From positions 310,001 through 374,000 of IMG/VR virus record IMGVR_UViG_3300028920_000022: a DNA stretch of 64,000 bases; one strand, given 5' to 3'. The notes beneath the pieces are model-generated. The model made no database searches and was not told the origin of the DNA. It saw nothing but the letters and a program-made list of their open reading frames with translations. Positions 13,106 to 63,386 of the stretch are shown in pieces. The translations under genes were made by a program, and so were the position numbers. Position 1 is the stretch's first letter; each line of letters begins with the position of its first letter.

Positions 13106-13107
13106 TC

Positions 13108-22221: not shown

Positions 22222-22222
22222 A

Positions 22223-27047: not shown

Positions 27048-27063
27048 TATTTTGCTGTTTAGA

Positions 27064-29450: not shown

Positions 29451-29458
29451 ATTTATCA

Positions 29459-33033: not shown

Positions 33034-34010
33034 TGGGTAGGACCAAAATTTTATGCACAGGTAGTGGCGGGTTTATATTTTCTAATTTTGTTCGTCAAAT
33101 ATTAAAATTTAACCCACCATCTGTAAAAGCCAAATATGAAGTTGTTGGTGTGGATAAGTGTACTTTACCTAAAGTATTGAATACTATTTATACCAACAGA
33201 GGTCATAAGTTTCATATTGGTGATGTAACAGATAGACATTTTATGAATATTATATTTGAGCTAGAACGCCCAGATATAGTAATTCACGCTGCTGCCGAAA
33301 CTTTTGTTGATAATGCAATTGAAGATGCTAACAAATTTGTTAAAACAAATGTAGAGGGAACACAAGTTATAATAGACATGTGTTTAAAATGGAATGTAAA
33401 AAGATGTGTGTACATCTCTACTGACGAAGTATATGGGCATCTGGTTAGTGAAGATTTATCGTCTTGGACGGAACATTCTATTCTTAATCCACGCAACCCA
33501 TATTCTGCCACCAAGGCAGCTGGCGAGTTGCTAATAAGAGCTGCACATGAAACTCATGGATTGCCCTATAATATTACTCGATCTTGCAACAATTATGGTC
33601 CCAGACAACCAGTTCGTAATCTAATCCCTAAAATTATTGCCAACATTCATCATGAGAGACCGGTGCCTATTTTTGGCCAAGGTATGCAGATACGTGATTG
33701 GATCCATGTTCAGGACTGTTGTGCTGCAATAATTAAAATAATAGAAGATGCTCCACTTAATGAAATATATAACATATCTGCAAAACAGGAATATACGAAT
33801 ATAGAGGTATTTCATGAGATTTGCAATATATTGGGTCGAGGGCATGATCTATTAAAGTTTGTTGAAGACAGAAGGGGACATGATTTTCGATACTCAATAA
33901 ACAACCAAAAAATGTTAGATTTAGGTTGGGAACCCAAATTCAAGTTTAAAGCTGGGTTAGAGCATACGGTCGATTGGTACATGAAAAACACTTGGTTTTT
34001 GAAGGATTAA
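33033..34010 (+). CDS. rfbB: dTDP-glucose 4,6-dehydratase
   Basis: TGSGGFI, HAAAETFVD, ISTDEVYG, PYSATKA, NNYGPRQ, RDWIHVQD, DRRGHDFRY. Confidence 0.9.
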   Translation: MGRTKILCTGSGGFIFSNFVRQILKFNPPSVKAKYEVVGVDKCTLPKVLNTIYTNRGHKFHIGDVTDRHFMNIIFELERPDIVIHAAAETFVDNAIEDANKFVKTNVEGTQVIIDMCLKWNVKRCVYISTDEVYGHLVSEDLSSWTEHSILNPRNPYSATKAAGELLIRAAHETHGLPYNITRSCNNYGPRQPVRNLIPKIIANIHHERPVPIFGQGMQIRDWIHVQDCCAAIIKIIEDAPLNEIYNISAKQEYTNIEVFHEICNILGRGHDLLKFVEDRRGHDFRYSINNQKMLDLGWEPKFKFKAGLEHTVDWYMKNTWFLKD

Positions 34011-47553: not shown

Positions 47554-47719
47554 TGAGGGGGGCTTTATTGAAATAAAAGCATCTTCTACCCCTAGCAAAG
47601 TAGATATTATACTTGCGGCAGTAGATTATGATAACCCATTAAAGAAAATTATTAATTCCGTCGAAATAGATGGCAAGGATTTTTTTAAACTAGTTAATTC
47701 GGTAAAACTTTCTGGGTAA
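47537..47719 (+). CDS. Small hypothetical protein
   Basis: GTG start after AGGAGG. Confidence 0.5.
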   Translation: MKIQFDEGGFIEIKASSTPSKVDIILAAVDYDNPLKKIINSVEIDGKDFFKLVNSVKLSG

Positions 47720-47794
47720 TACTGTCGAGGGTTGTGACTTGTATTCCTTATGATTTTCGGAGTTCAGAACTCTATTTTGCAAATAGGAGTGGTT

Positions 47795-48228: not shown

Positions 48229-51200
48229 ATGACACGTTATCCTGATAATGTAGATACAGGCGGGACTGGTGCATCAGCAACTCTGCCAGACGTAATTGAC
48301 AACGTTTCCCCAGTTAGTGCAATAGTAGTAAATAGGCTACGTAATGCAATTCTGGCTATCGAGAACGAGCTGGGTATAAACCCTAGCGAACGTTTTGGTA
48401 CAGTTAGAGACCGTTTAGATTGCTTGGAGTTTGGTCCTTGTGGTAGTGGCGGGGGCGGATCTTTATCTACTATCCTTCAAGATGGCGTCACGGTTATGAA
48501 CAATGTAGAGGCTCTGAATATTATTGGAGCCAATGTTACGGATGCAGGCGACCACCAGGCAGATGTTAATTTTTCTACTTTTATGTTGCTGGACGGATCC
48601 AGAGCAGCTACCGCTAATTGGGACCTGGGCGGAAATCGTATTACTAACCTAGCTGACCCTATTAATCCCCAGGACGCAGTAACAATGGCATATGTAGATG
48701 CTTTGTTCTCAGATGGCTATGCACCCGTATTAGAAACATTAACAGTATCTGCTGATGGACAAACTGTATTTACCTTAAGTCAAGTACCAGAATTACCAGG
48801 CGCTGTAGCGTTTTTCGCAGAGGGTATTAAACAGGAATTTGGTGTAGATTATACAGTGTCTGGTGCGAATATACATTATACCGGCGCAGAACCACTGTTA
48901 ACTACGGACACTATTGATGTTATTTATTATGTGTTAAGCTCTGGTTTTCCTGGTGGTGGAATACATCAGACATTAGCACAAACATTATTTTATGGAAATG
49001 TTACCGGCGGAGAAGATATCGTTGTCTCTGTCACTGACGCTATTACTAGCGAAAACCCCGCTGTTCCCGTATCTGTTATTGGTGACTTAAGTATAACTGG
49101 AAAATTAACTGTAGGTGGACTAATTGATCCAACCGGTCTTGTTCTTGATACACAGGGAAGCACTCCTGGGGGTGTACCTGCAGCTAATAAAGGAACCATT
49201 TGGTATCGCGCAAGTGATGAGCACATGGTTTACACTACAGATGCTGGTTTGGTGATTGATTTAACTACGGGAATAGTACCAACATTGGCAGAGGTTTTGG
49301 ATGCTGGTAACACTACGGATGGTTATGATATTATCATGTCAAATGGTAGTATTATTACCGCAACTACCGGCACTGGTGCCACTGACGGTTCTGATGTAGA
49401 TATATTAGCTGGTCCTGCTACCGGTACAGGGGCAGGTGGAGCAGTTAATATCAATGGTGGGTCAGCGGCAGCCGGAGCAGGTGGTAATGTAGTTATATAT
49501 GGCGGAGATGGTGGTACTGAAGGCGACGTATTAGTTGGGGCGGCTGGGAATACAGTTTTTTCTGTTATTGGTGATGTTTTAGGAACTATTACTTTTGATA
49601 AGGATGTTGCTCCCATTATCAATCAAACAGCTCCAACTTCTGGTGCCGGGTCTGATTTTCGTATTGATGTTCAGGACGCAACAACTACGGGAACTGGCGG
49701 AGATTTTATAGTTAATGCCGGATCGGGAGCGGGAGTATCACAGGGCGGAGCGATTGATCTTAATGCTGGCGGAACAGGAACGGGTTCTGGCGGTATAGTT
49801 TCCATTACTGGCGGGGATGGAACAATTAATGGCGGAACAATAACCCTTGAATCTGGTGCAGCAGCAACCGGCGGGGATTTGGAGTTGTTTGCCGGAGATT
49901 CTGCGGCAGGTACAGGTGGCAACGTTATAGTAAAAACTCAGGGCAACACAATTGGCGATATACAGTTTTTGTTGGATGCCAACACTGTAGCAGAGTTTTT
50001 GGGAAGTGCGCTGGGTACTTTTAGGTTTGGTAGGGCAACCACTCCTGTAATTAATGTTGAACAAAATACATCAGGAGCTGGTGCTGCTTTTACTATCACT
50101 TCACAGAAAGGCGGAAGTGGTGGGGTTAACGATGGTGGTGGATTATTCTTAAATGGTGGTAATGCTAGTGATTTGGGTGGCGACGGTGGAGCTGTTGAGA
50201 TTAGTGGTGGTACCGGAACTAATACTGGAATAATTGCACTTCATACAAATATTATAGAAATTGATGAAAATACTGTTGATATTCGTTCTGTAACCGATGG
50301 GTCTGTAAATGCAGATAGTGGTAGTTTTGCGATTCATTCAGGCAACATTACTGATGCAGGAAATAGTGGCTCGGTTATTTTCAATAGTGGATCTTCAGCA
50401 GGTGGAGATTCTGGCAATTTAGATTTATATACTGGCGGGGCGTCTACCTCAGGATCTATCCAGGCGTATACTGGAGATGGATATACAGATTCAGGTGATA
50501 TTGACATATACACCGGAGACGGGTACACAAGCTCTGGTGACATTGATATAGTAACTGGGGATGCCACTTACGGAACTGCTGGGCATTTACATCTTACTGC
50601 TGGTGATAGTTTATCAGGAAATCAGTCGGATATCTATATTGCTAGCGGAAGGGTGTTAACGGGGACTGATCGTAATCTAGTGAATATTTATGGCGGAGAT
50701 GGGTATTCTAATGGGTCTACGATTAATATTATTGCTGGAGCCGGGTATTGGGGTAGTGGTGGTACTCTTAATTTATATGGTGGATCCGGATCTACCAGTT
50801 CTGTACACGCTGATGATTTAGGACCTGGAGATGGAGGATCTGTTTTAGTTAGTGGAGGGGGTTGCATAAGTGGTACATGTGGTGATGCGAGCCTAGGTGG
50901 TGGCGTTACTGCACACGGAACTGGGGGCAATGTTTATATAAACGGTGGATTTACTCATGATGGACCATCAGCTGGAAGTGTTTATATTTCTGGTGGTGTA
51001 GATTATGGTGGAAATGATGATGGTTATGTAATATTTAGTATGGCTGACGAAGAAGTTGGCAGATTCGGGCGCGATCCGAGTGCATTAGTGTGTTCCTTAC
51101 AGGTACCAATTAAACTGAAGGAAGTTGCCAATCCGGGAAGACCAGCGACAGGATATGCTTATTTGTATTTATCGTCAACTGATGGGCATTTATGGATAAA

Positions 51201-51237
51201 TAAAGATGATGGCTCTGCTAGGGATTTGGAGACATAA
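48229..51237 (+). CDS. Glycine-rich fibre-like virion protein
   Basis: RITNLADPINPQDAVTMAYVD neck motif; many GG-x-hydrophobic-x-I-x-x-G beta-repeats; 6 DGY. Confidence 0.7.
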   Translation: MTRYPDNVDTGGTGASATLPDVIDNVSPVSAIVVNRLRNAILAIENELGINPSERFGTVRDRLDCLEFGPCGSGGGGSLSTILQDGVTVMNNVEALNIIGANVTDAGDHQADVNFSTFMLLDGSRAATANWDLGGNRITNLADPINPQDAVTMAYVDALFSDGYAPVLETLTVSADGQTVFTLSQVPELPGAVAFFAEGIKQEFGVDYTVSGANIHYTGAEPLLTTDTIDVIYYVLSSGFPGGGIHQTLAQTLFYGNVTGGEDIVVSVTDAITSENPAVPVSVIGDLSITGKLTVGGLIDPTGLVLDTQGSTPGGVPAANKGTIWYRASDEHMVYTTDAGLVIDLTTGIVPTLAEVLDAGNTTDGYDIIMSNGSIITATTGTGATDGSDVDILAGPATGTGAGGAVNINGGSAAAGAGGNVVIYGGDGGTEGDVLVGAAGNTVFSVIGDVLGTITFDKDVAPIINQTAPTSGAGSDFRIDVQDATTTGTGGDFIVNAGSGAGVSQGGAIDLNAGGTGTGSGGIVSITGGDGTINGGTITLESGAAATGGDLELFAGDSAAGTGGNVIVKTQGNTIGDIQFLLDANTVAEFLGSALGTFRFGRATTPVINVEQNTSGAGAAFTITSQKGGSGGVNDGGGLFLNGGNASDLGGDGGAVEISGGTGTNTGIIALHTNIIEIDENTVDIRSVTDGSVNADSGSFAIHSGNITDAGNSGSVIFNSGSSAGGDSGNLDLYTGGASTSGSIQAYTGDGYTDSGDIDIYTGDGYTSSGDIDIVTGDATYGTAGHLHLTAGDSLSGNQSDIYIASGRVLTGTDRNLVNIYGGDGYSNGSTINIIAGAGYWGSGGTLNLYGGSGSTSSVHADDLGPGDGGSVLVSGGGCISGTCGDASLGGGVTAHGTGGNVYINGGFTHDGPSAGSVYISGGVDYGGNDDGYVIFSMADEEVGRFGRDPSALVCSLQVPIKLKEVANPGRPATGYAYLYLSSTDGHLWINKDDGSARDLET

Positions 51238-51239
51238 AT

Positions 51240-51626
51240 ATGGGAACTTATTCAGAACGAGTTATTGGGTATGAGTTTGGACCTGTTGTTATTTCAACTA
51301 TCACTACAGTTACTGTGGGAACGATTGATGGAACCGATTTGAGAGGAATAACACAGAATTATAGCGCAGACGTTGAAATTCATGCGGTCCGATATGGAGG
51401 TGCTACGGGTTATACAGGTACAGCTACCAACACCGCGTCTGCGGAGCGAGGCACTGGTGACGTTCTTTGTCATAATGGTACGGCTGTTCTACTTGGAAAT
51501 GGTATAGCGAATGTATCGTTGGATGATAGTGGAACCGACATTTTAGTCAAATTGTCGACTAATCAGAATGGAGCCATGTCACACTTTGTCTGGCTTGTAT
51601 TTCGGGTAGCGGGTGATGTAGCATGA
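51240..51626 (+). CDS. Hypothetical beta-rich protein (possibly fibre-associated)
   Basis: 128-aa ORF directly after the fibre gene, with GGAG RBS. Confidence 0.5.
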   Translation: MGTYSERVIGYEFGPVVISTITTVTVGTIDGTDLRGITQNYSADVEIHAVRYGGATGYTGTATNTASAERGTGDVLCHNGTAVLLGNGIANVSLDDSGTDILVKLSTNQNGAMSHFVWLVFRVAGDVA

Positions 51627-52408
51627 GAATTACTGTTCTTTGCCCAACACATCGCGGTCCAACTGAGTTGCTTAGTGTGACCCGAATGTTTCGGAATCAG
51701 CGTCACCAGGATCGGCGATTGGTGTTTATTGAGAACGGACCTGCGCTGGGCGTCTCACGGTCGTTAGGAATTGTTGCGGATGCTGTGATGCAGTCCGATC
51801 ATTCCAAAGTTTCGGCGCTCAACGTCGGGTTGGCGTGGCTCCGCACGCATGGAGGCGGGGCTTGGGCTTTATGGGATGATGACGACTACTATGGTCCTGA
51901 ATATTTAACCGGAGTAGCTGTTGTTTTGCCAAAATATAATTTGATTGGTAAACGTTCCTTATATGTACGCCGTAATGATGGGCGGTTGTGGTTGATAGAA
52001 CGTTCTGCCGGATGGCCACTTGGTCATAGCTTTGCTGGTTGGTCGGATTGTTGTGATTTTCGTGAGTGTAATAGGTGGGGAGAAGATGATTTCTTCGTAC
52101 AAGATATGTTAGATCATGGTGCACAAATTGGCGACTCTGGCGCCACTTCATTTGTGTGGCAACGATCAGGTGATTTATCGAAACATATTTGGCCAGCTAC
52201 GGATGACCAAATTGCCCAAATTTTAACACTTAAAAGCGCCAATAGTAAAATTATTGATTATGGAAATGCGAATCGCATATTGGTAGACTGTGTTGAGAAA
52301 CAGTCAGGAAGAGTTGTAGAACTTCCTGATTTCGATCCGCTCAACGTACCTGGAATTCCCATCGAATTCCAAGAAAAAATTAAACAGTTGAGGGTTAATA
52401 ATGGTTAG
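51623..52408 (+). CDS. Glycosyltransferase family 2 embedded in the fibre module
   Basis: RITVLCPT, ALNVG, ALWDDDDYYGPEYL, GEDD. Confidence 0.8.
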   Translation: MRITVLCPTHRGPTELLSVTRMFRNQRHQDRRLVFIENGPALGVSRSLGIVADAVMQSDHSKVSALNVGLAWLRTHGGGAWALWDDDDYYGPEYLTGVAVVLPKYNLIGKRSLYVRRNDGRLWLIERSAGWPLGHSFAGWSDCCDFRECNRWGEDDFFVQDMLDHGAQIGDSGATSFVWQRSGDLSKHIWPATDDQIAQILTLKSANSKIIDYGNANRILVDCVEKQSGRVVELPDFDPLNVPGIPIEFQEKIKQLRVNNG

Positions 52409-55400
52409 AACTAGAGAAGGATTTTTAGGCGGAATAACCATATTGGATGAGGATGGTTACGGATTGGTTACAGCTAGTAATGCCCGTATTACCAACGTTA
52501 CCGACCCTGTTAATCCACAAGATGCTGCCACTAAAAACTATGTAGATGGTTATTTTGAAGCTCATAATGAATGGAGTGAAATTTTAGCTATTGGAAATAT
52601 AACTGATGGAAATAATCCTACAATTAGTACTGGAGACAAGATTGTAGGAGAAACAGATCTTGAATTAGACTGTGCTGCTGATGGATATGTAATAGTTAAT
52701 GCTGGTGGAACTGAAATTGTTCGTTTCGGTTTGGGAAGCTTGGCGATGCAGTTTGGGGATTCTGATAATGCAATTATTGGATTCCCCACTTCGGCTACTG
52801 ATGGTGTTAGCCTTACTATTAGGGGACAGGGTGGGAACGCAAGTTTCGCAGATGGCGGAAATGTGTTTATCATGGGTGGTGATAGCGGTGGCGGTGGCGG
52901 TTCTGCTGGTGGAAATGTTAACATTTCATCTGGCGACGGCTCGGGGGGCTCCCCGGGTGACATTAATATTGAAACCCCAGCCGTGACAAGTTCTTGTGGC
53001 GGAAGTATTAATATAAACACCGCCAACTCTAGCGCTTGTGGTCCTGGTGGAATTTTTGTCACTGTTGGAAATACTTCTGCTGGTTATGGTGACAGCTACT
53101 CATATAGTCCTAATGTTGGCTCGATACCATCTCCAGTATCTTATAAACTTGTTTTAAGAACAGAAGACGGATCTGCTGTAGGCAGTTGCGGAGGTATTTT
53201 ATTTAAAGTTGGTGATGCCAATTATACCCCAGCTCCATTGACTTTAATTGGTGGTGACTCATCTTCTGCTACAGGGACCAAGGGTGGAGATGTTATAGTT
53301 CGTTCGGGTAATAGTGACTTTGGTGAAGGTGGGGACCTTTTTATTATATCGGGATCATCTAGTGGTACCGGAGATGGTGGAGATATTTATATTCGTACCG
53401 GAGATGGTGGAGTAGGTGCCGGGGATGGCTATATTATCTTCGAAGCCACTTCGAGTAATGAAATTGCTCAATTTAATAATTTAAACGGAAATCCTACACT
53501 TCAATTTGGCAATCATGGAGCCGCACTAATTACACAAGATAGCATAGCAACTGCCGCTGAAGCGTTTACCATTAGAGCACAATCTTCCACTGGTTCAACT
53601 GGCGGTGATTTAGAATTATATTCTGGTGATTCTGCTTATGCCCAGTACCCAGGTGATGTTAACATTTACAGCGGTGTTGGTGGAGGACAAGTTTATTCTG
53701 GTAATATTAATCTTTCTACGGATTTGGGGTATACTTCGATCGGTGGTGGCGGCAATATTTCTATTACCACAAATCAAAGCAATGGTTTGAGGGGTGGATC
53801 TATTCTTTTGCAAACCGGTGACGCTTCTAGTGGTGGCCCAGGTACTATCACAATTGCAACCGGAAATGCGAATTCTGGCACTGGGAACCAACATATCAAT
53901 ATAACTGCCGGAAACCAAATCGCTTCATTTAGCGGCGCAGCGGGTAGCGTAAATCTTACTTCCGGAAATGGTACCGGAACATCTGATGCCGGAAGTGTAA
54001 CACTTACAGCAGGAAATTGTGATACTGGGGCGCCAGGAACAATTCTTCTTGTTGCTGGAGATGCCGGCGGCGGAGTAGATGGTGGCGACGTTACTATTCG
54101 AAGTGGATCTGGCGGCAGCGGAGCAGGAGATGGTTATATTATTTTTGAAGCCAGTGTTAGCGGTGAAATTGCTCAATTCAACAATTTAAACGGAAATCCT
54201 ACACTTCAGTTTGATAATCACGGATCTGCAGAAATTAATGGATCTCAAAATTTCTCAATCTATGGGTTAGATAGCGGAACCGTTGATACTTTAATGATGG
54301 GATTGAGCGGTGATAATCTTTTGGTTGGCGATGGCACAAGCGTTGATGATGTGAGGTTGCAATCAGCAACCGCGGTTGAAGCATGGGTTGCAGGATCCAG
54401 AGTGATCGAAATGAGTACCGGCAGTCTTTTCTTTGCATCAGCGGTTGCCGGACCGGTTATTCAACAAGAGCAGACAGGCAACGAAAATTGTGATGATTTG
54501 ACATTACACGCTCAAAATGTCGTAGTAACAGCTGGTGGTCCATTTACTGCAGGAGATATGGTCGTTGCAGCCGGGCAGGTTTCATCAGATAGTGGCGCCG
54601 GCACCAGTAGTGGTGGTGATGTAATCTTACAACACGGAAAATACCAAGACACTGGTTTGCTTCAAGGCGCTAAATTAGGACAAGATGTAAATGGACAATA
54701 TATAAGTGTAGGAGCCGCTTCGGTTTCATCAACCGGCATGGTGCGTGGACCGGAAGACTTCTCGATCTATGGATTAAACACTACTCCGGCTAATGCTAGA
54801 TTAATAGCTTTTGATGATGACGATCTTAGAGTTGGTGATACTAATAATAGCAATTTGTATCTTTCAACTGGTCCCGCTGCGGGAGCCGACGGGTATGTTG
54901 TTTTAGAATCTGATGTTAATGAAATTGTTAGGTTTAGCAGTGATGGAACAGGGGATGCATTTATAGGGTTTGATGTTGGATTTACTAATGGTATTGGTTT
55001 AGCCATAGAGGCTCAAACTACCATGGCTGGAATTGGTGGCGAGCTTTATTTAGCCGCAGGTGATAGTAGCTCTGGATTCGATGGAAATGATGTAACTATA
55101 AAATCTGGCACAGCAGGTGCCGGGCCAGGTAGTGATGGATACATTATTGGAATGATTGGCGGCACAACTGAGTTTACAATAGGACCCAATTACTTTGCGC
55201 ATAGCCCTAATGGATGTAATGTTTCTAGAACAGGTTATTGGCGTAACGGAGAAATATTAGACATTGCTGCACTTGTGAACGGAGGAGCGTTTGATGCCAA
55301 TATTTTGTGGTGGTACAATGATACACTTTTACTTGGAGATGCTACTCGTTCTGACTCTTCTACTTTAGCATCTAATACTGCAGTAAATTTGCGTATTGGT

Positions 55401-56765
55401 AATGATGGTGTTTTTAGGGTTCGTAGTGGCTGGGTAGAAATTCACCCTAATGGAGCCGCCAGCTCTGGGCTTGGAACCATTGCCGGACCTGAAAATTTTG
55501 ACATTTATGGGTTAAATACTGTTCCTGCTGACGCAAGACTAATAGGGCTGGATGGTAACGATCTTCGTGTTGGTGACGCTAATAATAGCAATTTGTATCT
55601 GTCAACCGGACAAGCCGTACCATCTGGGGTTGATGGATATATTATATTCGAACGTGGCTCCGGAAATGAAATATTTAGAGTAGATGAAGATGGTTATAAT
55701 AATATAGATCGTATTTTCTTCTATGGTGATCGTGATTATGATACCATGATTACTAGAGATATTCCAGGAGCTACCACTAGTAACTTATCTAGAGATTTAA
55801 TCATACAAGGACAAACTGGATATTATCCAAATAGATCTGGAAATCTTATCTTGTCCAGCGGTGACTTGACTTCCTACGGTAGTGGAAGTCTGTATGGCGC
55901 CATTGAGTTTCATATTGGAGGATATGAGTCCGATACCACCTTTAAGATGAATGATGATGGTAGAATTGAGTGGGGCGCTGATAGTTTGATGGGGCTTGTG
56001 GCTACTAGTACTACAGGCGCCGGTGCGACTATGGAAATATACGCTCAAGAATCTTCCGCCAATAACGGTGGAGATGTAGATATCCGAGGCGGAGAGGCTT
56101 CTGGTGTGACGGGCGATGGTGGTGATGTTGATATCACTGGAGGAGCATGTCCTAGCAATACCGGCGGAAATGTTAATATATATTCTGGTGATGGTGACGC
56201 AAGCGGTGTGGTCAATATAGGCTATAGCGGATCCTTTGATATCGTTACTTTTGGGGTACAGACACTTGTTGAACCAACGACTGCATACTACATTTCTCGC
56301 TCTAGAGTAGCATCTTCTGATGAATACGCCCTGAAAGCTTTTTCTCCTAATTCGGTATTAACTACACTTGCCCCAAATGGTACCGCTGATGGCTATACCC
56401 AACAGGTTATCTTTGAAGTAGGAACAACAACTACTTGGAATGGCGATCAGGAAACCTGTTTGGCCGTTGCTATACCTACAAATTATTATGGGAAAATAAC
56501 TGTGGATGTTACCGCAGAAGACCAGGCTGATCCCCAGAACGCTTATGGCTATGCTAATTCGTTCTTGATCAGTAATGATGCAGGTGTAGTTACCATCAGA
56601 GATAGTAGCCTGGCTCCTACTGAACAAGATCCTCAGGCTACCGGTGTGTCAGCGACAGTAGATGCAAATGGTGATGATGTTAGGGTTAGAGTAACAGGTA
56701 ATGTTGGAGAAAATTGGACCTGGACAGCTATGATGCATGGAATTGTATGTGAGCGTAGTGTATGA
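52401..56765 (+). CDS. Glycine-rich fibre-like virion protein with internal duplicated modules
   Basis: RITNVTDPVNPQDAATKNYVD neck motif, GGD-x-x-I repeats, duplicated modules; 10 DGY. Confidence 0.7.
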   Translation: MVRTREGFLGGITILDEDGYGLVTASNARITNVTDPVNPQDAATKNYVDGYFEAHNEWSEILAIGNITDGNNPTISTGDKIVGETDLELDCAADGYVIVNAGGTEIVRFGLGSLAMQFGDSDNAIIGFPTSATDGVSLTIRGQGGNASFADGGNVFIMGGDSGGGGGSAGGNVNISSGDGSGGSPGDINIETPAVTSSCGGSININTANSSACGPGGIFVTVGNTSAGYGDSYSYSPNVGSIPSPVSYKLVLRTEDGSAVGSCGGILFKVGDANYTPAPLTLIGGDSSSATGTKGGDVIVRSGNSDFGEGGDLFIISGSSSGTGDGGDIYIRTGDGGVGAGDGYIIFEATSSNEIAQFNNLNGNPTLQFGNHGAALITQDSIATAAEAFTIRAQSSTGSTGGDLELYSGDSAYAQYPGDVNIYSGVGGGQVYSGNINLSTDLGYTSIGGGGNISITTNQSNGLRGGSILLQTGDASSGGPGTITIATGNANSGTGNQHINITAGNQIASFSGAAGSVNLTSGNGTGTSDAGSVTLTAGNCDTGAPGTILLVAGDAGGGVDGGDVTIRSGSGGSGAGDGYIIFEASVSGEIAQFNNLNGNPTLQFDNHGSAEINGSQNFSIYGLDSGTVDTLMMGLSGDNLLVGDGTSVDDVRLQSATAVEAWVAGSRVIEMSTGSLFFASAVAGPVIQQEQTGNENCDDLTLHAQNVVVTAGGPFTAGDMVVAAGQVSSDSGAGTSSGGDVILQHGKYQDTGLLQGAKLGQDVNGQYISVGAASVSSTGMVRGPEDFSIYGLNTTPANARLIAFDDDDLRVGDTNNSNLYLSTGPAAGADGYVVLESDVNEIVRFSSDGTGDAFIGFDVGFTNGIGLAIEAQTTMAGIGGELYLAAGDSSSGFDGNDVTIKSGTAGAGPGSDGYIIGMIGGTTEFTIGPNYFAHSPNGCNVSRTGYWRNGEILDIAALVNGGAFDANILWWYNDTLLLGDATRSDSSTLASNTAVNLRIGNDGVFRVRSGWVEIHPNGAASSGLGTIAGPENFDIYGLNTVPADARLIGLDGNDLRVGDANNSNLYLSTGQAVPSGVDGYIIFERGSGNEIFRVDEDGYNNIDRIFFYGDRDYDTMITRDIPGATTSNLSRDLIIQGQTGYYPNRSGNLILSSGDLTSYGSGSLYGAIEFHIGGYESDTTFKMNDDGRIEWGADSLMGLVATSTTGAGATMEIYAQESSANNGGDVDIRGGEASGVTGDGGDVDITGGACPSNTGGNVNIYSGDGDASGVVNIGYSGSFDIVTFGVQTLVEPTTAYYISRSRVASSDEYALKAFSPNSVLTTLAPNGTADGYTQQVIFEVGTTTTWNGDQETCLAVAIPTNYYGKITVDVTAEDQADPQNAYGYANSFLISNDAGVVTIRDSSLAPTEQDPQATGVSATVDANGDDVRVRVTGNVGENWTWTAMMHGIVCERSV

Positions 56766-57685
56766 AAAAGTTAGTACATAATATTCTGCACCCAACAAAT
56801 ATCCCAAATTGCAAATTATGGTGGGAAGGAGATTTTACCCCTAACGCGGGTAACGTTATAGATGCTGATGGTGATGATTATGTTTATTCTTCTATTCCCA
56901 ATCGCGGAGAACTTGGAGGAGACTTTAGTTCTGCCACTTATAAACCATTAGTTTCTCACCTAGAGAGCGGAGGTTTTCCTAGAAGAGTACCATATTTTAC
57001 AGACGGTTATCAAATAAGCTCTTTGGCTCCAAGTAGCTGGAAGTTTTTGCATAAGGAATTTACTCTTGTGTTTGTAGTTTTTTGTGCCGATACAGGTACA
57101 ATATTTAGTACTTTTAGTGATCCTAGTGATTCAGGAATAGATATAGTTTTGTGGAAAGAAGCGGATGGTGGAGATATAACATTGTATGTTGGTGATGGTT
57201 CTGGTGGCGTGGCTATAAATGATAGCGCCCATGGTTTAACGGATAATATATTACATGTGTGTTCAATTAGATTAGCACAAACCGGTTATGATGTTAGGAT
57301 TGATCAAGAAACAAAATTAGAAGATGTTCCAGCTTGGCCGTTAACTGTGGATGATCCCCCAGATACCTTAAACATTGCATGCCGAAGCGGAGTTACTAAT
57401 CAATTTACGGGTAATCTAATCGCTGCTGTTGCATATGATGGCTATCTGGCTTTAGAGCAATTGGAACAAATAGAATATCACTTTATCTCTAAATATGGAG
57501 ATCAAAGCGTTCATGTGGCTCAAAAACCTACTTTTTATTTTAATATTGATATGACACCCTATGGTTATCATATAGACGTTGAAAATCCGGATTCGGGGTT
57601 GTATGCGAATAGATTGGCGGATTTTTCTGGGAATGCTCATGATGCTTTCCAAAATACCAAAAATAAACAGGGAAAAATAGATTAG
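56762..57685 (+). CDS. LamG-like receptor-binding/fibre protein, short paralog of 58273 and 60834
   Basis: CKLWWEGDF..SIPNRG, WKFLH, KPTFYF, DFSGNAH..QNTKNKQG all align with the N-terminal parts of the two downstream genes. Confidence 0.65.
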   Translation: MKKLVHNILHPTNIPNCKLWWEGDFTPNAGNVIDADGDDYVYSSIPNRGELGGDFSSATYKPLVSHLESGGFPRRVPYFTDGYQISSLAPSSWKFLHKEFTLVFVVFCADTGTIFSTFSDPSDSGIDIVLWKEADGGDITLYVGDGSGGVAINDSAHGLTDNILHVCSIRLAQTGYDVRIDQETKLEDVPAWPLTVDDPPDTLNIACRSGVTNQFTGNLIAAVAYDGYLALEQLEQIEYHFISKYGDQSVHVAQKPTFYFNIDMTPYGYHIDVENPDSGLYANRLADFSGNAHDAFQNTKNKQGKID

Positions 57686-58272: not shown

Positions 58273-60837
58273 ATGGTTCTTGGTTCATTTGCTAAAAGAA
58301 CATTATTAAACCCTGGTAGTGTAACTAGAGTTTCTGCTGGTACTAAATTAACTTATGCGTCTAATGTGCCGATTCCGACATTATGGGTTGAGTTTGATTA
58401 TGGGACCTCGATTGACTCTGCTTCTGAGCCGTGGGTGTATTCGTCGGTAACGAACCGGGGCACGTTGGGCGGAACATTTTCGTCTGCCGGAGCTGCGAGG
58501 CTTCAGGTCGCGCACATCGAGAGTGGTAGCTTTGCGCGTCAGGTTGCGCGGGGAGACGGAAGCGCGACGTATGCGGACTGGAGTGCTGCCCTAGCGGACC
58601 AGAAGTTCCTGCACGGCGATAAGGTAATGATCGACCTCACCTTGCGAGTGAACAGCTTTACCGCTGGCGACACGGTGATCGATTCCTGCGCTTGGGGCGG
58701 AGGAAACACCGGGATCCTTGTCTACGTGTCGGCCGTTGGGCAGCTGACAATCGTGCTCAATAATGGCACGGGCACGACGTGCGTTGCCTACACAACCGGT
58801 AGTAACAATATCGTAGCTGGTACGGTTCACACCGTGACCTTGATCCACGATTCGACCCGTTCGCCGCAGACCGAAGTTCTAGTCGACGGAGTGCAGGTCA
58901 ACACCCATGCCATGACGGGTACGCCGTCTACCGGTAATGCGACCTATTCGTTGCGCTTGGGACACCGCAATTCGGGCGGCACCGCGTTTGATGGTCAAAT
59001 CCTTGCGCTCGTTGCTCGTGTTGGCACGTATGTAGCGGCAGAGGGTGCGCTAGTGCGTGGCTACCTCTCCGCGAAGTACCAGCAGCAGAACGCTCAGTCT
59101 CTCCAAGTGCCGACATTCTATTTTAATCTTTCTGTTTATGACGATTATACGATTGACACTGGCAATGCGGAGCCGGGAGACCAAGTAAATCGAATTATAG
59201 ATCTTAGTGGAAATATTCATACTGCGATCCAGAACACCGACGCCAAGCAAGGCACCCTCGGCACCGACAGCGACGGTAACACCGAGATCGCGGTGGACGG
59301 AACGGCGGACTACTACGGGGTTGCGGCTGGTGGCGGTTGGCCGTCGGGAACAAGCCACACGATCTGGGCCGAACTTGACAGCGACAACCCGACTGTCCCA
59401 ACAGAGTTTTTGTTCGATTTCCAAACCGGGCGACTTGCGCTTGGGACGCGGATGGGCGGGACCGGAAAGGCAGGAATATACATATCCGGATATACCGGAG
59501 TCGCTGACAACATCGCTGGTGAACAGTCACTAGAGTGGCACCTCGACGACACCGCTAACACGGTAAGCATGTACCGGACCGGGCAATACTTGGGAGAGGG
59601 CGCGTACATTGGATCAATTGCTATGGGCGGGACCGTCACCCTGGGCATTCACCACAACGGTAGCTCAGCCCCATGGGACGGGGCATTCCAAGAACTCTGG
59701 GCCCGCGATTCCCTCCAGTCCACTACCGAAATCTTCGAGTCCCGCGCCGCACGAGCCGCACGCTACCCGACGCGGTGGGCGGACACGCTGCCGCTGGTTG
59801 TACCGGTGGGCCCCGAAGGTTGCTGGTTCGATACGAGTGACGCGGCGAATTTCGTGCTGGATGGGACCGACATCATCGTCGCCAAGGACTGCAGCCGGCT
59901 GATTGACGATCCGGTCAGCAATGGGGACTTTGAGACGGGCAGTCCGCCGAGCGATTGGACTGCTATTAGCGGTGATACCCTGTCGGCACAGGCAGGCGCG
60001 CGAACCGGCGGCAGTGGTTCACAGATCCTTCGCGGTAGGATCGAGATAGGAGACACGCTTGGATATGCCGTGCAGTCCTGCCTCACGGTTGGACAGCGAT
60101 CCATGTTCGACATTTGGATGCGCGGTGACGGTACCAACGGCTACCCGAGGGTAACGGACAGTGGCGGGGTGAATGTCTGGACCGGGACCACATCCAACAC
60201 GTGGCAGCACGCAATAGCTGTCGTGAACTCGAACCACGCCGATCTAACGCTGCAGACACGTGGTGACAACGCGACCCAGGACTACGCCGAATTTGACGAC
60301 CTGATCGTCACCCCCGGCAACCACGCCTACCAGCCCACCGCCGCGAACCGGCCGACGTATGACGTGGCGAACGGGTGTATGAACTTCGTGGCGGCGAACT
60401 CGGAGTGGGCGGACACGGGGATCGTACCGGGCGTGGCTGGGTCGGTTGACTTGTGGGTCAAGCAGACTGCCGGCACCTACGCATGGGGAGCGTACAACGC
60501 TGGCGCGAACAAACTCTGGCTCCAGAACAGCGGCGGAAATTGGCTCCTCGCGCTGGGGACGGATACGCTGCCGAGCGGGGTTGCAGTGTCCGGTGCGTGG
60601 CAACACGTAACGTGCACGTGGGGTGCCGGAGCATATTCGATCACCGTCGATGGCACGCGAGTGACCGGGACATACACCAGCGGGCTACCAACGATCGCAA
60701 TCTTCCTCGCGTGCCGTAACTTGATCGGCGTAGCAAACACGTTCAGCGATGTCCAAATCAGCGGCTACCAGCATCGCCCCTACGCCATGACTGCCGATCA
60801 AATTGCGTACCTCCACACCCTCGGGCGCAACCCATGA
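58273..60837 (+). CDS. Multi-LamG/CBM-like putative receptor-binding protein (GC mosaic)
   Basis: LamG-like repeats (VDLWVK, WQHVTCTW, ITVDG) and CBM-like SNGDFETG..W; paralog of 60834-63386. Confidence 0.7.
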   Translation: MVLGSFAKRTLLNPGSVTRVSAGTKLTYASNVPIPTLWVEFDYGTSIDSASEPWVYSSVTNRGTLGGTFSSAGAARLQVAHIESGSFARQVARGDGSATYADWSAALADQKFLHGDKVMIDLTLRVNSFTAGDTVIDSCAWGGGNTGILVYVSAVGQLTIVLNNGTGTTCVAYTTGSNNIVAGTVHTVTLIHDSTRSPQTEVLVDGVQVNTHAMTGTPSTGNATYSLRLGHRNSGGTAFDGQILALVARVGTYVAAEGALVRGYLSAKYQQQNAQSLQVPTFYFNLSVYDDYTIDTGNAEPGDQVNRIIDLSGNIHTAIQNTDAKQGTLGTDSDGNTEIAVDGTADYYGVAAGGGWPSGTSHTIWAELDSDNPTVPTEFLFDFQTGRLALGTRMGGTGKAGIYISGYTGVADNIAGEQSLEWHLDDTANTVSMYRTGQYLGEGAYIGSIAMGGTVTLGIHHNGSSAPWDGAFQELWARDSLQSTTEIFESRAARAARYPTRWADTLPLVVPVGPEGCWFDTSDAANFVLDGTDIIVAKDCSRLIDDPVSNGDFETGSPPSDWTAISGDTLSAQAGARTGGSGSQILRGRIEIGDTLGYAVQSCLTVGQRSMFDIWMRGDGTNGYPRVTDSGGVNVWTGTTSNTWQHAIAVVNSNHADLTLQTRGDNATQDYAEFDDLIVTPGNHAYQPTAANRPTYDVANGCMNFVAANSEWADTGIVPGVAGSVDLWVKQTAGTYAWGAYNAGANKLWLQNSGGNWLLALGTDTLPSGVAVSGAWQHVTCTWGAGAYSITVDGTRVTGTYTSGLPTIAIFLACRNLIGVANTFSDVQISGYQHRPYAMTADQIAYLHTLGRNP

Positions 60838-62465
60838 CGCGCATTTTAACCTCAAAGAATTTATTTAGTGTAACCGGTTCCGACAAAATCGGATGGAGCC
60901 CCGCCTCAATCGCAGATTGTCAACTGTGGTGGGAATGTGATTTTTCAGATAAAAGAGGAAGATCTATTACACCCGGACCGCCAGATGTATATGATTCAAT
61001 TCCAAATTTAGGCAGATTTCTGGGTACGTTTGATGCCGCCGCAGCTGCGCGCCCTACCGTTGCCTATATAACCTCAAATGATGTAATTAGACAAGTTGCC
61101 CTCTTTGACGCTACCAATGATAGATTGCAAAGTAGCTTGGCTGCCACTAATTGGAAAAATTTGCACTCAGGTAACTTTACCATATTTGCCGTATATAGAC
61201 CTACGACTGATTCTGCTGGATATATTTTCGCTACCCAGGAAAATAACGCCAATAATACCGGAGTAGCTATATATTTCAATACCGAGGCTAATGGTGGAGG
61301 GTTTACCGTAAGTAATGGAACCGGCGTTTATGTCATTAATCAAAGCTCTGGCGTTGATACAGTAACCGTTGGTGAAGTGTGTATCCAGGAAGTATACGTA
61401 GAACAAGGAGCTATTACCGAATATGAAATTGTTATCAATGGTATAGCTAATGTTGGAGGACCATTAATAGGCGATCCGTCTAGTGGAGATCCCACAAATA
61501 CCGCAGCAATTGGGGCTGGAAGTAATGCTTCTACAGATCCTTTCGGTGGTCAAATAATGGCGATTATTGGATACGATCGATCACTTACAGATTTAGAAAG
61601 AGCGGTGATTAGGGATTATTTAGCAAGTAAGTATCAAGAGAATGGAGTTTCGGTAGAACAGAATCCTACGTTTTATTTCGATTTTAGTACAAAAAGAAGT
61701 TACCATATAGACACAGGAAATGCTCAAGCTGGGGAACAGGCGGATATTTTATATGATTTAAGTGGAAATGCTCATCAGGGTATTCAAAATACAAATAATA
61801 AGCAGGGTACTATGGGTTTTGATGATGATAATAATAGGGAAGTGGAAGTTGATGGGACGGCTGATTGTTATGCATTGAGCGCCGCCGCGGGTTGGCCGGC
61901 TGGAACGAGCCACTCGTTTTGGTGTGAATACGATCCTGACGGCTCCACCGGCGCAAATCAGTATTTCGTGGACTTCGCCACCGGGCGCCTAATCTTTGCG
62001 CACCTTGGCGTGACCGGAAAATTGGGTGTGTACGATGGGTCATGGAGAGGATTGGGATCTGCGATTACCGGTGAGCAGTCAGTGGAATTTCACTGCAACG
62101 ACACAGCCAACACGATCGAGGCTTACCGAACCGGCACCCTAGTTGGACAGGCTACTTACGGCGCATCCGTGGCGATGGGCGGAACCACTGCGCTGTTATC
62201 GCACAATGGGCAAGCGGCTGGGTTTATTGATGGTTCCATCCAAGAACTCTGGGGCCGCGATTCCCTCATGTCGACCACCGAAATCTTCGAGTCCCGCGCC
62301 GCCCGTGCAGCAAAGTATCCTACTCGGTGGGCTGATACTTTACCATTAGTTGTACCAGTGGGACCGGAAGGATGTTGGTTCGATACTAGTTCAGCTGATA
62401 ATTTTGTATTGGATGGCACGGACATCATCGTCGCCAAGGACTGCAGCCGGCAGATTGACGATCCG
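59687..62465 (+). repeat. Dispersed direct repeats between the two LamG paralogs
   Basis: 59687-59750 similar to 62239-62302; 59869-59913 vs 62421-62465 (44/45 identical). Further blocks outside this span: 60342-60365 = 62882-62905 (24 bp) and 60821-60838 = 63370-63387 (18 bp). Confidence 0.9.
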
Positions 62466-63386
62466 CTGGTGGACGGTGACATGGAAGCGGTGGGGACCGC
62501 TAACTGGGCGTCACTGTCCGGCGCCACGATCACGAAACAGGGCGGCGCATATCAGGGCGCACAATGCCTGCGTGCCGCTCTCGCCGTCGCTGACACGTTC
62601 GGGGCCGCCCGTCAGGTGGCGTTGACGGTCGGCGAGCGGTATTTGGTCGAAGGTGTTGCTCAGGGTGACGGCACCAACGGTTTCCCGCGTCTATATTTTG
62701 GCGGTTCTCAGAACCTGTGGAACGGCACAACGGCCAACGCTTGGCAGGAGTGCGTAGCGGTCGAAACGGCTGGGTTCACTCAACTGGACTTGGGCGTCGG
62801 TGGTGTCAATGGCACGGCTGACTATGCTGAGTGGGATGCAGTCACCATCACCCCCGGAAACCACGGCTACCAGGCTACGAGCGCGAACCGGCCGACGTAT
62901 GACGTAGCCAACAAATGCATGACATTCACGGCGGCGAACAGTGAACTTCTAGACTGGGTGGTCCCGAACGCAAGCGCGGGAACATTGTTGGGGTGGGTTA
63001 AGTTCGGGGGTGTGCAACAAACACTGGCTGGATCATGGGATACCAGCGACTATTGCTTGCTCGAATTGGACGGCGCACAAAAGGTTCGGGCATATGTCGG
63101 AACACACGTTATCGTTAGTACAAACACACTGTCTACTGGTGTGTGGCACCTTCTGGCTATAACGTGGGACGGATCATCTGAAACGTTATACATTGACAAC
63201 TTGCCCCCGCAGTCTAAATCAGACGGGGACTCTGCCAGCACCCGTGCCTTGACCGTTGGGGCGCGTGATTTCAACGGTGCGATCGATTGGTATTTGAACG
63301 GATCGATCAGCGACGTACAGCTTCGTCCCTACGCAATCACGGCGGCTGAGTACGCCTACCTCTACGGCATCGGGCGCAACCCATGA
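60834..63386 (+). CDS. Multi-LamG/CBM-like putative receptor-binding protein (GC mosaic)
   Basis: TLLGWVK, WHLLAITWDG, LYID, YLNGSISDV; collinear with 58273-60837, and both end in GRNP. Confidence 0.7.
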   Translation: MTRILTSKNLFSVTGSDKIGWSPASIADCQLWWECDFSDKRGRSITPGPPDVYDSIPNLGRFLGTFDAAAAARPTVAYITSNDVIRQVALFDATNDRLQSSLAATNWKNLHSGNFTIFAVYRPTTDSAGYIFATQENNANNTGVAIYFNTEANGGGFTVSNGTGVYVINQSSGVDTVTVGEVCIQEVYVEQGAITEYEIVINGIANVGGPLIGDPSSGDPTNTAAIGAGSNASTDPFGGQIMAIIGYDRSLTDLERAVIRDYLASKYQENGVSVEQNPTFYFDFSTKRSYHIDTGNAQAGEQADILYDLSGNAHQGIQNTNNKQGTMGFDDDNNREVEVDGTADCYALSAAAGWPAGTSHSFWCEYDPDGSTGANQYFVDFATGRLIFAHLGVTGKLGVYDGSWRGLGSAITGEQSVEFHCNDTANTIEAYRTGTLVGQATYGASVAMGGTTALLSHNGQAAGFIDGSIQELWGRDSLMSTTEIFESRAARAAKYPTRWADTLPLVVPVGPEGCWFDTSSADNFVLDGTDIIVAKDCSRQIDDPLVDGDMEAVGTANWASLSGATITKQGGAYQGAQCLRAALAVADTFGAARQVALTVGERYLVEGVAQGDGTNGFPRLYFGGSQNLWNGTTANAWQECVAVETAGFTQLDLGVGGVNGTADYAEWDAVTITPGNHGYQATSANRPTYDVANKCMTFTAANSELLDWVVPNASAGTLLGWVKFGGVQQTLAGSWDTSDYCLLELDGAQKVRAYVGTHVIVSTNTLSTGVWHLLAITWDGSSETLYIDNLPPQSKSDGDSASTRALTVGARDFNGAIDWYLNGSISDVQLRPYAITAAEYAYLYGIGRNP

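What the first reader, a model, noticed from the sequence alone, without database searches (positions are those of the whole stretch)
51240..52408. A GT2 gene wedged between two DGY-rich fibre genes
Seen: a glycosyltransferase about 18 kb from the main cluster, overlapping both neighbours inside the fibre operon and somewhat more GC-rich. Inference: a dedicated fibre glycosyltransferase, comparable to adhesin-linked GTs in bacteria. This is independent positional support for virion protein glycosylation.
Basis: partly seen in the sequence, partly recalled or inferred. Interest (0 to 1): 0.65.

Follow-up and report, generated by a model that had tools for sequence, protein, structure and literature searches.

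The report
Phage fibre-tip gene paired with glycosyltransferase
A huge marine-sediment phage carries, inside its tail-fibre operon, a soluble sugar-transferring enzyme that in related phages nearly always sits right after a particular fibre-tip domain, which suggests (but does not prove) that it sugar-coats the fibre.

Summary
The interval 51240-52408 holds two genes, not one. P0001 (51240-51626, 128 aa) is an all-beta protein. It is homologous to the C-terminal tip domain of phage fibres, including the window's own fibre 2. P0002 (51623-52408, 261 aa) has a confident GT-A fold (Z 15.5-17.2 to the GT2 enzymes RmlT, AvpGT, WrtF, TarP and SpsA). Its DDDD/DXD motif is invariant, it has a conserved candidate base (D155), and it has no membrane segment. 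Pfam, PHROGs and NCBIfam do not recognise it; only sub-threshold GT2 hits appear.

The gene overlaps P0001 by 4 nt and fibre 2 by 8 nt. The GC difference is trivial overall and visible only at third codon positions.

- All four P0001-family clusters in the protein database are followed by this GT.
- 16 of 22 evaluable loci with a family member scoring at least 100 bits have a large same-strand protein one or two genes upstream (near 16/48 against distal 7/97, p = 1.4e-4).
- Remote homologues below 100 bits show no such linkage.

The genome lacks an integrase, initiating lipid-carrier transferases, flippases and ligases.

The best reading is a fibre or fibre-tip protein glycosyltransferase. The acceptor is inferred, not shown. 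The main rival is a host-receptor glycan modifier that travels with the receptor-binding tip.

The parts
48229..51237 (+). Fibre 1, 1002 aa. It is Gly/Thr/Asp-rich and has a T7-tail-fibre-like N-terminal motif. Its last ~45 residues (residues 957-1000) are conserved in the upstream fibres of close-clade relatives.
   Evidence: Composition. Weak PF03906 hit, E 8.9e-4. C-terminal conservation with the L001, L003, L006 and L106 fibres. One of only two ORFs in the genome that are both >=730 aa and >=13% Gly.
51240..51626 (+). P0001, 128 aa.
   Evidence: AF2 pLDDT 90.1. Fold hits to the C-terminal domains of Acinetobacter phage tailspikes, T4 gp9 and the Kp9 fibre. hhalign against fused fibre C-termini: probability 92%, E 6.5e-7 over 109 columns. 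The control against the GT family gives probability 0.2%. An iterative HMM started from the fused domains recruits all free-standing members. Only 4 clusters exist in 5.8 billion proteins, and each is followed by the GT.
51623..52408 (+). P0002, 261 aa. A soluble GT-A-fold, GT2-like glycosyltransferase. The DXD motif is D85-D88, the candidate catalytic base is D155, the catalytic domain is about residues 1-183, and residues 184-261 form a C-terminal extension.
   Evidence: Single copy in the genome. Overlaps P0001 by 4 nt and fibre 2 by 8 nt.
52401..56765 (+). Fibre 2, 1454 aa, Gly-rich. Its N-terminus is conserved with the fibres of L003 and L007. Its C-terminal ~140 aa (56343-56762) form a P0001-like tip domain.
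   Evidence: 64-65% identity over the first 34-99 residues, which confirms the start codon and the 8-nt overlap. Tip domain.
56762..57685 (+). 307-aa ConA-like/Laminin_G-like protein that continues the adhesion module.
   Evidence: No Pfam, PHROG or NCBIfam hit. The ESM Atlas feature and structure neighbours are viral Laminin_G_3-type proteins. This is a lead only.
58273..63386 (+). Two further large Laminin_G_3 lectin-domain proteins (854 and 850 aa) at the distal end of the fibre/adhesion island.
   Evidence: Pfam PF13385, E 5.5e-15 and 2.4e-14.
7834..34010 (+). Context: the 'main cluster' of nucleotide-sugar synthesis and glycosyltransferase genes, a possible donor-sugar supply. It holds GT4-like, three GT2, GT1-like and GT29-like genes, plus KDO8P-synthase-like, cytidylyltransferase, DegT aminotransferase, GDP-mannose dehydratase, epimerase, formyltransferase and methyltransferase genes.
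   Evidence: All three PF00535 hits in the genome lie here.

Best explanation
P0002 is a soluble, cytoplasmic, metal-dependent GT-A (GT2-like, probably inverting) glycosyltransferase. It belongs to a small, uncurated, phage-associated subfamily whose gene is coupled to a specific fibre-tip beta-sandwich domain. In this phage it is translated from the late fibre operon in the order fibre 1, tip protein P0001, GT, fibre 2.

Most likely it transfers a sugar from a nucleotide-sugar onto the tip domain and/or the fibre polypeptides before or during fibre assembly, so that the receptor-binding end of the virion carries a glycan. The nucleotide-sugar could come from the host or from the phage's own 26-kb sugar cluster.

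Shown here: the fold, the conserved catalytic motifs, the lack of membrane segments, the gene overlaps, and the conserved synteny with the fibre-tip domain.

Inferred: that the enzyme is active, that the acceptor is a fibre or tip protein, the identity of the donor sugar, and any biological effect such as shielding, stability or altered receptor binding.
For: Enzyme identity:
- AF2 model pLDDT 89.8, pTM 0.86.
- Foldseek probability 1.00 to GT2 enzymes.
- VIA Z 17.2 to RmlT (rmsd 2.8 A over 184 residues), 17.0 to AvpGT, 16.5 to WrtF and TarP, 15.5 to SpsA.
- The family profile aligns the DDDD motif on the DSDD (DXD) of GalT1, with weak GT2 hits at E about 0.005.
- 10 of 13 members give sub-threshold PF00535 hits.
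- D85, D87 and D88 are present in 28/28 members, D86 in 26/28, D155 in 25/28 and R181 in 26/28, across members down to about 26% identity.
- No membrane segment: the maximum 19-residue hydropathy is 1.44 or less.

Structural context:
- 4-nt and 8-nt overlaps with P0001 and fibre 2.
- The two flanking genes are the only large Gly-rich ORFs in the 459-kb genome.
- In L001 the same triad lies between the Phage_GPD/base_V genes and GPW_gp25.

Linkage:
- Every close-clade locus that can be evaluated has the order fibre, P0001-like ORF, GT.
- P0001 is homologous to the fibre C-terminal domains that directly precede the GT where no spacer ORF exists.
- 16 of 22 loci with a member scoring >=100 bits have a large same-strand protein at -1 or -2. 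Near offsets give 16/48 against 7/97 at distal offsets (Fisher p = 1.4e-4). Position +1 gives only 1/25.
- The neighbours carry fibre hallmarks: Collagen plus Laminin_G_3, DUF2793, DUF5907.
- L003 has an NAD-dependent sugar epimerase inserted in the same operon.

No envelope-glycan machinery and no integrase in the genome: PF02397, PF00953, PF04932, PF01943, PF04138 and PF00589 are all absent, with positive controls.

Precedent: phage-encoded glycosylation of capsid and tail-tube subunits in mycobacteriophages, as summarised in PMC12619734. GT genes next to tail genes in archaeal tailed viruses have been read the same way (PMC11706807).
Against: - There is no direct evidence for any acceptor.
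- Synteny with the receptor-binding tip fits a receptor-modifying enzyme equally well.
- The closest solved structures (RmlT, TarP, TarS, WrtF) act on teichoic acids or oligosaccharides, not on proteins.
- The linkage disappears in remote homologues (2/17 and 0/10). Four members of the near family are not next to a fibre (L009, L011, L015, L019).
- The loci are related by descent, so the Fisher p-value overstates independence.
- The fibre identity of the neighbours rests on sub-threshold Pfam hits, composition and homology to proteins in baseplate contexts.
- The assignment of D155 as catalytic base is positional inference.
Confidence: 0.5

Rival explanations
1. Receptor-modifying enzyme. P0002 glycosylates a host cell-envelope glycan (LPS, teichoic-acid-like polymer, capsule or S-layer glycan) at the cytoplasmic face. 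This glycan is the one the adjacent fibre tip recognises. The modification masks the receptor, which excludes superinfection or stops progeny being lost on debris. The gene travels with the tip as a host-range cassette.
For: The best structural matches are polymer-modifying GT2 enzymes, including the prophage-encoded TarP and also TarS and RmlT. The tight linkage is specifically to the receptor-binding tip domain rather than to the fibre shaft. From my own knowledge, not tested here: receptor-blocking genes lie next to receptor-binding-protein genes in phage T5 (llp next to oad), and the Gtr-type seroconversion systems of temperate phages modify the phage's own receptor.
Against: The gene is translationally coupled inside a late structural operon. 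In L001 it lies inside a baseplate module. The genome has no integrase, no GtrA-type flippase, no Wzx, no Wzy/ligase and no initiating transferase. The protein has no membrane anchor. The GT is much better conserved (55-62% identity in the close clade) than the tip domain (24-41%). That is unexpected if both track the same variable receptor.
Confidence: 0.25
2. P0002 glycosylates some other acceptor, for example another virion protein (capsid, sheath or the neighbouring lectin-domain proteins), or it elongates a glycan started by the main-cluster enzymes. On this reading its place in the fibre operon reflects only co-expression with late genes.
For: The phage has a large separate GT and nucleotide-sugar cluster that may need further transferases. 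Three Laminin_G-type proteins follow in the same island. Some family members lie away from fibres (L009, L015, L019).
Against: The directional, near-obligate adjacency to the tip domain across deep divergence is hard to explain by timing of expression alone. Relatives such as L001 keep the triad with no sugar cluster within 10 kb on either side of the gene.
Confidence: 0.15
3. Non-catalytic role. The GT-fold protein is a fibre assembly factor or a virion component that has lost transferase activity. A DNA-modifying role is also placed here.
For: Genes immediately downstream of fibre genes often encode assembly chaperones (my own knowledge, not tested here). No curated GT model recognises the protein.
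Against: The DXD aspartates are invariant in 28/28 members, and N38/G39, D155 and R181 are conserved. That argues for retained nucleotide-sugar and metal binding and for catalysis. The location in a structural operon rather than a replication module argues against DNA glycosylation.
Confidence: 0.07

Closest known systems
GT2-family GT-A glycosyltransferases with solved structures (L. monocytogenes RmlT, S. aureus TarP/TarS, WrtF fucosyltransferase, AvpGT, B. subtilis SpsA)
   Same: The same Rossmann-like GT-A catalytic domain (Z 15.5-17.2, rmsd 2.2-3.2 A over 170-200 residues). A DXD motif after beta-4 that aligns with theirs. Soluble and single-domain in size, like SpsA and WrtF.
   Different: Only 11-18% identity. 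Below the threshold of every curated HMM. Lacks the C-terminal oligomerisation and polymer-binding domains of RmlT, TarS and TarP. Encoded in a phage fibre operon. Donor and acceptor are unknown.
Mycobacteriophage virion glycosylation (Freeman et al. 2023, cited through PMC12619734)
   Same: Phage-encoded glycosyltransferases that decorate virion structural proteins. It is the only experimentally established bacteriophage precedent found in the literature searched.
   Different: There the modified proteins are the capsid and tail-tube subunits, at their C-termini. Here the candidate target is a fibre or fibre tip, the phage is an unrelated 459-kb marine-sediment phage, and nothing has been shown biochemically.
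Bacterial adhesin-dedicated glycosyltransferases (HMW1C with HMW1A; Aah with AIDA-I, TibC with TibA; GtfA/B with serine-rich repeat adhesins). From my own knowledge.
   Same: The same logic of gene arrangement: a dedicated cytoplasmic GT encoded next to the large repetitive adhesin it modifies.
   Different: To my knowledge those enzymes belong to other CAZy families and folds (GT41, heptosyltransferase-type GT-B, GT4). P0002 is GT-A/GT2-like. This is analogy, not membership.
Phage seroconversion and host-glycan GTs (GtrB-type bactoprenol glucosyltransferases; prophage TarP)
   Same: A phage-encoded GT2-fold enzyme. The viral structure library returns a 'GtrB' from an uncultured phage among the matches, and TarP scores Z 16.5.
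   Different: No transmembrane helices. No GtrA flippase partner and no integrase in the genome. A GtrC-type partner was not searched for. The gene sits in a late structural operon rather than a lysogeny module.

Membership tests
GT-A fold glycosyltransferases (CAZy GT2-like) | Single Rossmann-like alpha/beta/alpha GT-A catalytic domain | tested here: met
   AF2 pLDDT 89.8. Foldseek probability 1.00. VIA Z 17.2 to 15.5 against RmlT, AvpGT, WrtF, TarP and SpsA, covering residues 1-183.
GT-A fold glycosyltransferases (CAZy GT2-like) | DXD metal and nucleotide-sugar binding motif at the end of beta-4 | tested here: met
   D85-D88 follow strand 80-83. They align on the DSDD of GalT1 (5hea). D85, D87 and D88 are present in 28/28 members.
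GT-A fold glycosyltransferases (CAZy GT2-like) | Match to the curated family model (Pfam PF00535 or NCBIfam) above its cut-off | tested here: not met
   P0002 has no hit at E<=0.1. 10 of 13 relatives hit PF00535 only below threshold, best E 1.1e-4. L011 scores 16.4 bits against a cut-off of 23.3. hhalign to the phage's own GT2s is marginal.
GT-A fold glycosyltransferases (CAZy GT2-like) | Catalytic base (Asp/Glu) at the start of the helix after the acceptor loop | tested here: inconclusive
   D155, in the WGEDD motif at the start of helix 154-164, is present in 25/28 members. Its equivalence to SpsA D191 or TarP D181 is inferred from the aligned ranges only, and those residue numbers are from my own knowledge. 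No residue-level superposition was available.
GT-A fold glycosyltransferases (CAZy GT2-like) | Nucleotide-sugar-dependent transferase activity with inversion of configuration | not testable with these tools
   Needs an enzyme assay.
Phage virion-protein glycosylation systems | Phage-encoded GT co-expressed with structural genes | tested here: met
   Overlapping reading frames inside the fibre operon. A baseplate context in L001. Transcription itself was not observed, as no RNA runs exist.
Phage virion-protein glycosylation systems | Glycan covalently attached to a virion protein, dependent on the GT | not testable with these tools
   Needs mass spectrometry or glycostaining.
Adhesin-dedicated GTs of bacteria (HMW1C, Aah/TibC types) | Homology to GT41 or heptosyltransferase-type (GT-B-like) enzymes | tested here: not met
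   All the listed top matches in PDB are GT-A/GT2 enzymes, and the BFVD matches are mostly annotated GT-A/GT2. None of those families appears among them.
Adhesin-dedicated GTs of bacteria (HMW1C, Aah/TibC types) | GT gene adjacent to the adhesin gene it serves | tested here: met
   Adjacency is conserved. That the GT serves the neighbouring protein is not shown.
Seroconversion GTs (GtrB type) | C-terminal transmembrane helices and GtrA/GtrC partners, in a temperate phage | tested here: not met
   No hydrophobic segment. No PF04138 (GtrA) and no PF00589 (integrase) in the genome. A GtrC-type partner was not searched for.

The most novel reading that the evidence does not exclude
A previously undescribed, phage-specific module exists in which a fibre-tip beta-sandwich domain (free-standing or fused) and a dedicated divergent GT-A enzyme are inherited together. 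On this reading the enzyme glycosylates the receptor-binding tip itself. Some huge phages would then present a self-made glycan at the point of host contact, for example to tune receptor binding, to evade host or grazer recognition, or to be bound by the lectin-domain proteins encoded next to it. This would be the first case of tail-fibre glycosylation in a bacteriophage.
Probability: 0.35. Interest if true: 0.8.

Novelty: new variant of a known kind. Interest (0 to 1): 0.58.

Why it matters
Glycosylation of bacteriophage virions has so far been shown only for the capsid and tail tube of mycobacteriophages. The searched literature holds no report of a glycosylated bacteriophage tail fibre. A GT subfamily whose gene is tied to the receptor-binding tip would give a concrete, easily cloned three-gene system (fibre C-terminus, 128-aa tip protein, 261-aa GT). 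With it one could test whether phages modify their own adhesins or instead mask the cognate host receptor. Either outcome bears on host range, on superinfection exclusion and on the purpose of the large sugar clusters in huge phages. It would also add a currently unrecognised family to the annotation libraries, and it corrects the gene model of this locus.

Tried and rejected
No binding evidence exists either way.
- PHROGs, NCBIfam and Pfam scans of P0001, P0002 and several neighbours gave nothing above threshold.
- tblastn of P0001 and P0002 against 50,697 deposited phage records found no match.
- The promoter and terminator scan of 47.4-58.4 kb was no better than shuffled sequence (28 against 28.2 and 8 against 7.9). 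It says nothing about operon structure.
- Reverse linkage test by pattern scanning of viral contigs with the tip-domain alignments: A4 and A2 were too divergent to make patterns, and A3 found only its own contig. I replaced this with the word-based protein search.
- My first linkage count used a 700-aa cut-off and looked weak. Inspecting the loci showed many upstream proteins of 570-695 aa or cut by contig ends. The recount with a 550-aa cut-off and distal-offset controls is the one reported. The threshold was changed after looking at the data, which is a caveat.
- The spacer ORFs of intermediate-clade loci are not detectably related to P0001.
- The label test on the GT tree showed no clustering of fibre-adjacent against non-adjacent members. 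The tree is star-like with long branches, so it was used only to show that fibre adjacency is spread across clades.
- No RNA runs hold this sequence.
- The 1.84-billion-protein HMM search was not run, following the operators' cost note. The fold had already settled the protein's class, and the claim does not rest on absence of relatives.
- The GC argument for foreign origin was rejected as too weak.
- The Freeman et al. 2023 paper could not be read.
Full report
**What is at the coordinates**

The interval 51240-52408 is not one gene. It holds two same-strand ORFs. P0001 spans 51240-51626 and encodes 128 aa. P0002 spans 51623-52408 and encodes 261 aa.

P0001 starts 2 nt after the stop of a 1002-aa ORF (48229-51237). 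P0002 overlaps P0001 by 4 nt (ATGA). The next ORF (52401-56765, 1454 aa) overlaps P0002 by 8 nt. The start of the 1454-aa ORF is confirmed by 64-65% identity from residue 1 with fibres in two other contigs.

The window is bases 310001-374000 of a 458,729-bp viral record rated 100% complete by CheckV. It comes from a marine-sediment metagenome. It has no close cultured relative; the best DnaB-type helicase hit is 24% identical.

**The neighbours**

Both large flanking proteins are Gly-rich, at 18.6% and 16.9% G. They contain recurrent GG(D/N) and DGY repeats and the motif ITN(L/V)xDPxNPQDAxTxxYVD. That motif gives sub-threshold hits to the T7 tail-fibre N-terminal family. They are the only two of about 737 ORFs in the genome that are both at least 730 aa long and at least 13% Gly.

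Downstream lie a ConA-like/Laminin_G-like 307-aa protein and two Laminin_G_3 proteins of about 850 aa. The stretch 48.2-63.4 kb is therefore an adhesion island.

Upstream are replication and metabolism genes: TubZ, helicases, an intein-containing RNR and an M24 peptidase. The distance of about 18 kb is correct.

The GC claim is weak. The GT has 45.3% GC against 44.3% and 43.6% for the fibres, and all three are high for this genome. Only GC3 differs (37.8% against 26-27%), and that sits within the genome's spread.

**What P0002 is**

Pfam, PHROGs and NCBIfam give no hit for P0002. A word-based search of 5.8 billion proteins finds only 13 clusters, all metagenomic and unnamed. Their alignment shows an N-terminal VxxPxxR strand, ENG, an invariant WDDDDYYGP and WGEDD.

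The AlphaFold2 model is confident, with pLDDT 89.8 and pTM 0.86. It matches GT2-family GT-A enzymes:
- Foldseek gives probability 1.00.
- VIA-align gives Z 17.2 to RmlT (rmsd 2.8 A over 184 residues), 17.0 to AvpGT, 16.5 to WrtF and TarP, and 15.5 to SpsA.
- The viral structure library returns mostly GT-A/GT2-annotated proteins.

At sequence level the family profile aligns residues 2-105 to solved GT2 enzymes at E about 0.005. That alignment places DDDD on their DXD. Ten of 13 members give sub-threshold PF00535 hits. Comparison with the phage's own Pfam-positive GT2 genes is marginal, so P0002 is not a recent paralogue of the main cluster.

Across 28 family members down to about 26% identity, D85, D87 and D88 are invariant. 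D86, N38/G39, D155 and R181 are nearly so. No member has a hydrophobic segment.

I conclude that P0002 is an active, soluble, divergent GT2-like GT-A enzyme. The curated-model criterion for GT2 membership is not met. The assignment of the catalytic base is positional inference.

**What P0001 is**

Its model (pLDDT 90.1) is an all-beta sandwich. The best matches are the C-terminal domains of Acinetobacter phage tailspikes, T4 gp9 and a Klebsiella phage fibre.

A profile-profile comparison of the P0001 family was run against the last 140 residues of the fibres that directly precede the GT in other phages, and of the window's own fibre 2. It gives probability 92% and E 6.5e-7 over 109 columns. 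The control against the GT family gives 0.2%. An HMM iteration started from the fused domains alone recruits every free-standing P0001-type protein at E 1e-27 to 1e-49.

P0001 is therefore a free-standing copy of a fibre-tip domain. In close relatives the fibre upstream of it ends in a conserved motif of about 45 residues. That motif is a plausible docking site for the tip protein, which is inference.

Every close-clade locus that can be evaluated has the order large protein, P0001-like ORF, GT. In the 40-kb contig L001 this triad lies between the Phage_GPD/base_V genes and GPW_gp25, so it is inside a baseplate module. L003 is syntenic with the window from the M24 peptidase to fibre 2. It has in addition an NAD-dependent sugar epimerase between the GT and fibre 2.

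The reverse test is limited but clean. The P0001 family has only four clusters in the database, and all four are followed by the GT, including the independently found L106.

I then collected about 100 loci from viral, metagenome and genome collections and stratified them by similarity:
- Among single-domain members scoring at least 100 bits, 16 of 22 evaluable loci have a large same-strand protein at position -1 or -2.
- Near offsets give 16/48 against 7/97 at distal offsets (Fisher p = 1.4e-4).
- The effect is directional; position +1 gives 1/25.
- Members below 100 bits show no enrichment (2/17 and 0/10). These include bacterial and multi-domain proteins.

The large neighbours carry fibre hallmarks: Collagen plus Laminin_G_3, DUF2793 and DUF5907.

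Three caveats apply. The loci share ancestry, so the p-value overstates independence. The 550-aa threshold was chosen after inspecting the loci. Four near-family members are not next to a fibre.

**Mechanism and rivals**

The genome lacks initiating phosphoglycosyl transferases, a Wzy/ligase, Wzx, GtrA and a tyrosine integrase. Positive controls worked for each search. Together with translational coupling in a late structural operon and the absence of a membrane anchor, this favours direct cytoplasmic glycosylation of a soluble acceptor, most simply the tip domain or the fibre. I give this about 0.5.

The main rival, at about 0.25, is that the enzyme modifies the host glycan recognised by the adjacent tip, for receptor masking. 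This fits the specific linkage to the receptor-binding tip and the structural similarity to teichoic-acid GTs. It fits less well with the operon position, the lack of lysogeny or export genes, and the fact that the GT is far better conserved than the tip domain.

Two further rivals are less likely. One is another acceptor, or elongation of a glycan built by the main cluster (about 0.15). The other is a non-catalytic or DNA-directed role (about 0.07).

No direct evidence for the acceptor could be obtained.

**Comparison with what is known, and novelty**

Experimentally established phage virion glycosylation concerns the mycobacteriophage capsid and tail tube (summarised in PMC12619734). GT genes beside tail genes of archaeal tailed viruses have been interpreted in the same way, without proof (PMC11706807). 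A phrase search of the library found no report of bacteriophage tail-fibre glycosylation.

Bacterial adhesin-GT pairs are an analogy of gene arrangement. The fold found here is GT-A/GT2-like. That the bacterial enzymes belong to other fold families is from my own knowledge.

The finding is best described as a new variant of a known kind. It is an uncurated GT-A subfamily coupled to a fibre-tip domain, in a phage that also carries a large sugar cluster. It gives positional support, not proof, for virion glycosylation.

Noticed in passing
window 58273-60837 and 60834-63386: The 854-aa Laminin_G_3 protein has the highest GC (58.4%) and GC3 (66.1%) of all ORFs of at least 150 aa in the 459-kb genome. 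Its 850-aa Laminin_G_3 neighbour is also high (GC3 48%). This could be a recent acquisition or an unusual codon regime at the end of the fibre island.
   Followed up: partly
window 41938-45081: The ribonucleotide reductase large subunit is interrupted by an intein with a LAGLIDADG homing endonuclease domain.
   Followed up: no
window 34641-36011 and 41278-41937: A TubZ-type tubulin homologue and a sigma-70-like protein lie between the sugar cluster and the fibre island.
   Followed up: no
window 7834-34010: The main cluster holds a GT29 sialyltransferase-like gene (25465-26088). It also holds DHDPS/NAL-like, KDO8P-synthase-like, cytidylyltransferase, DegT aminotransferase, GDP-mannose dehydratase, formyltransferase and FkbM methyltransferase genes. 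Many ORFs of 220-300 aa in the AT-rich stretch 16-25 kb have no family. The genome has no initiating lipid-carrier transferase, flippase or ligase.
   Followed up: partly
L003 8399-9966: In a syntenic relative, a 210-aa unknown ORF and an NAD-dependent sugar epimerase/dehydratase are inserted between the GT and the fibre 2 homologue.
   Followed up: partly
L009 10887-11897: A radical SAM/SPASM enzyme gene lies directly downstream of a GT-like family member that is not next to a fibre.
   Followed up: no
window 51959-51994 (P0002 residues 113-124) and 51121-51171 (fibre 1 residues 965-981): Both the GT (YVRRNDGRLWLI) and the conserved C-terminus of fibre 1 (YLYLSSTDGHLWINKDDG) contain a similar beta-hairpin motif, YxxxxxDGxLW. 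In the PDB sequence search the GT's copy produced spurious hits to designed beta-propeller 'Cake' proteins. It may be chance.
   Followed up: no
window 46708-48106: An M24 metallopeptidase (methionine-aminopeptidase-like) and a 118-aa ORF sit just upstream of the fibre operon. They are conserved in the same position in L003.
   Followed up: no
L011 9143-10765: One relative is a 540-aa ORF with about 286 extra N-terminal residues of unknown family fused to the GT domain. It is not verified to be a true fusion rather than an over-extended start.
   Followed up: partly
L022 and L023 (Pirellulales MAG contigs); L024-L028 (Labrenzia, Neobacillus genomes): Homologues at 36% identity lie on short contigs binned with a Pirellulales MAG. 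This could be a hint to the host or simply phage contigs in the bin. Remote homologues (23-27%) occur in bacterial chromosomes without fibre neighbours.
   Followed up: partly
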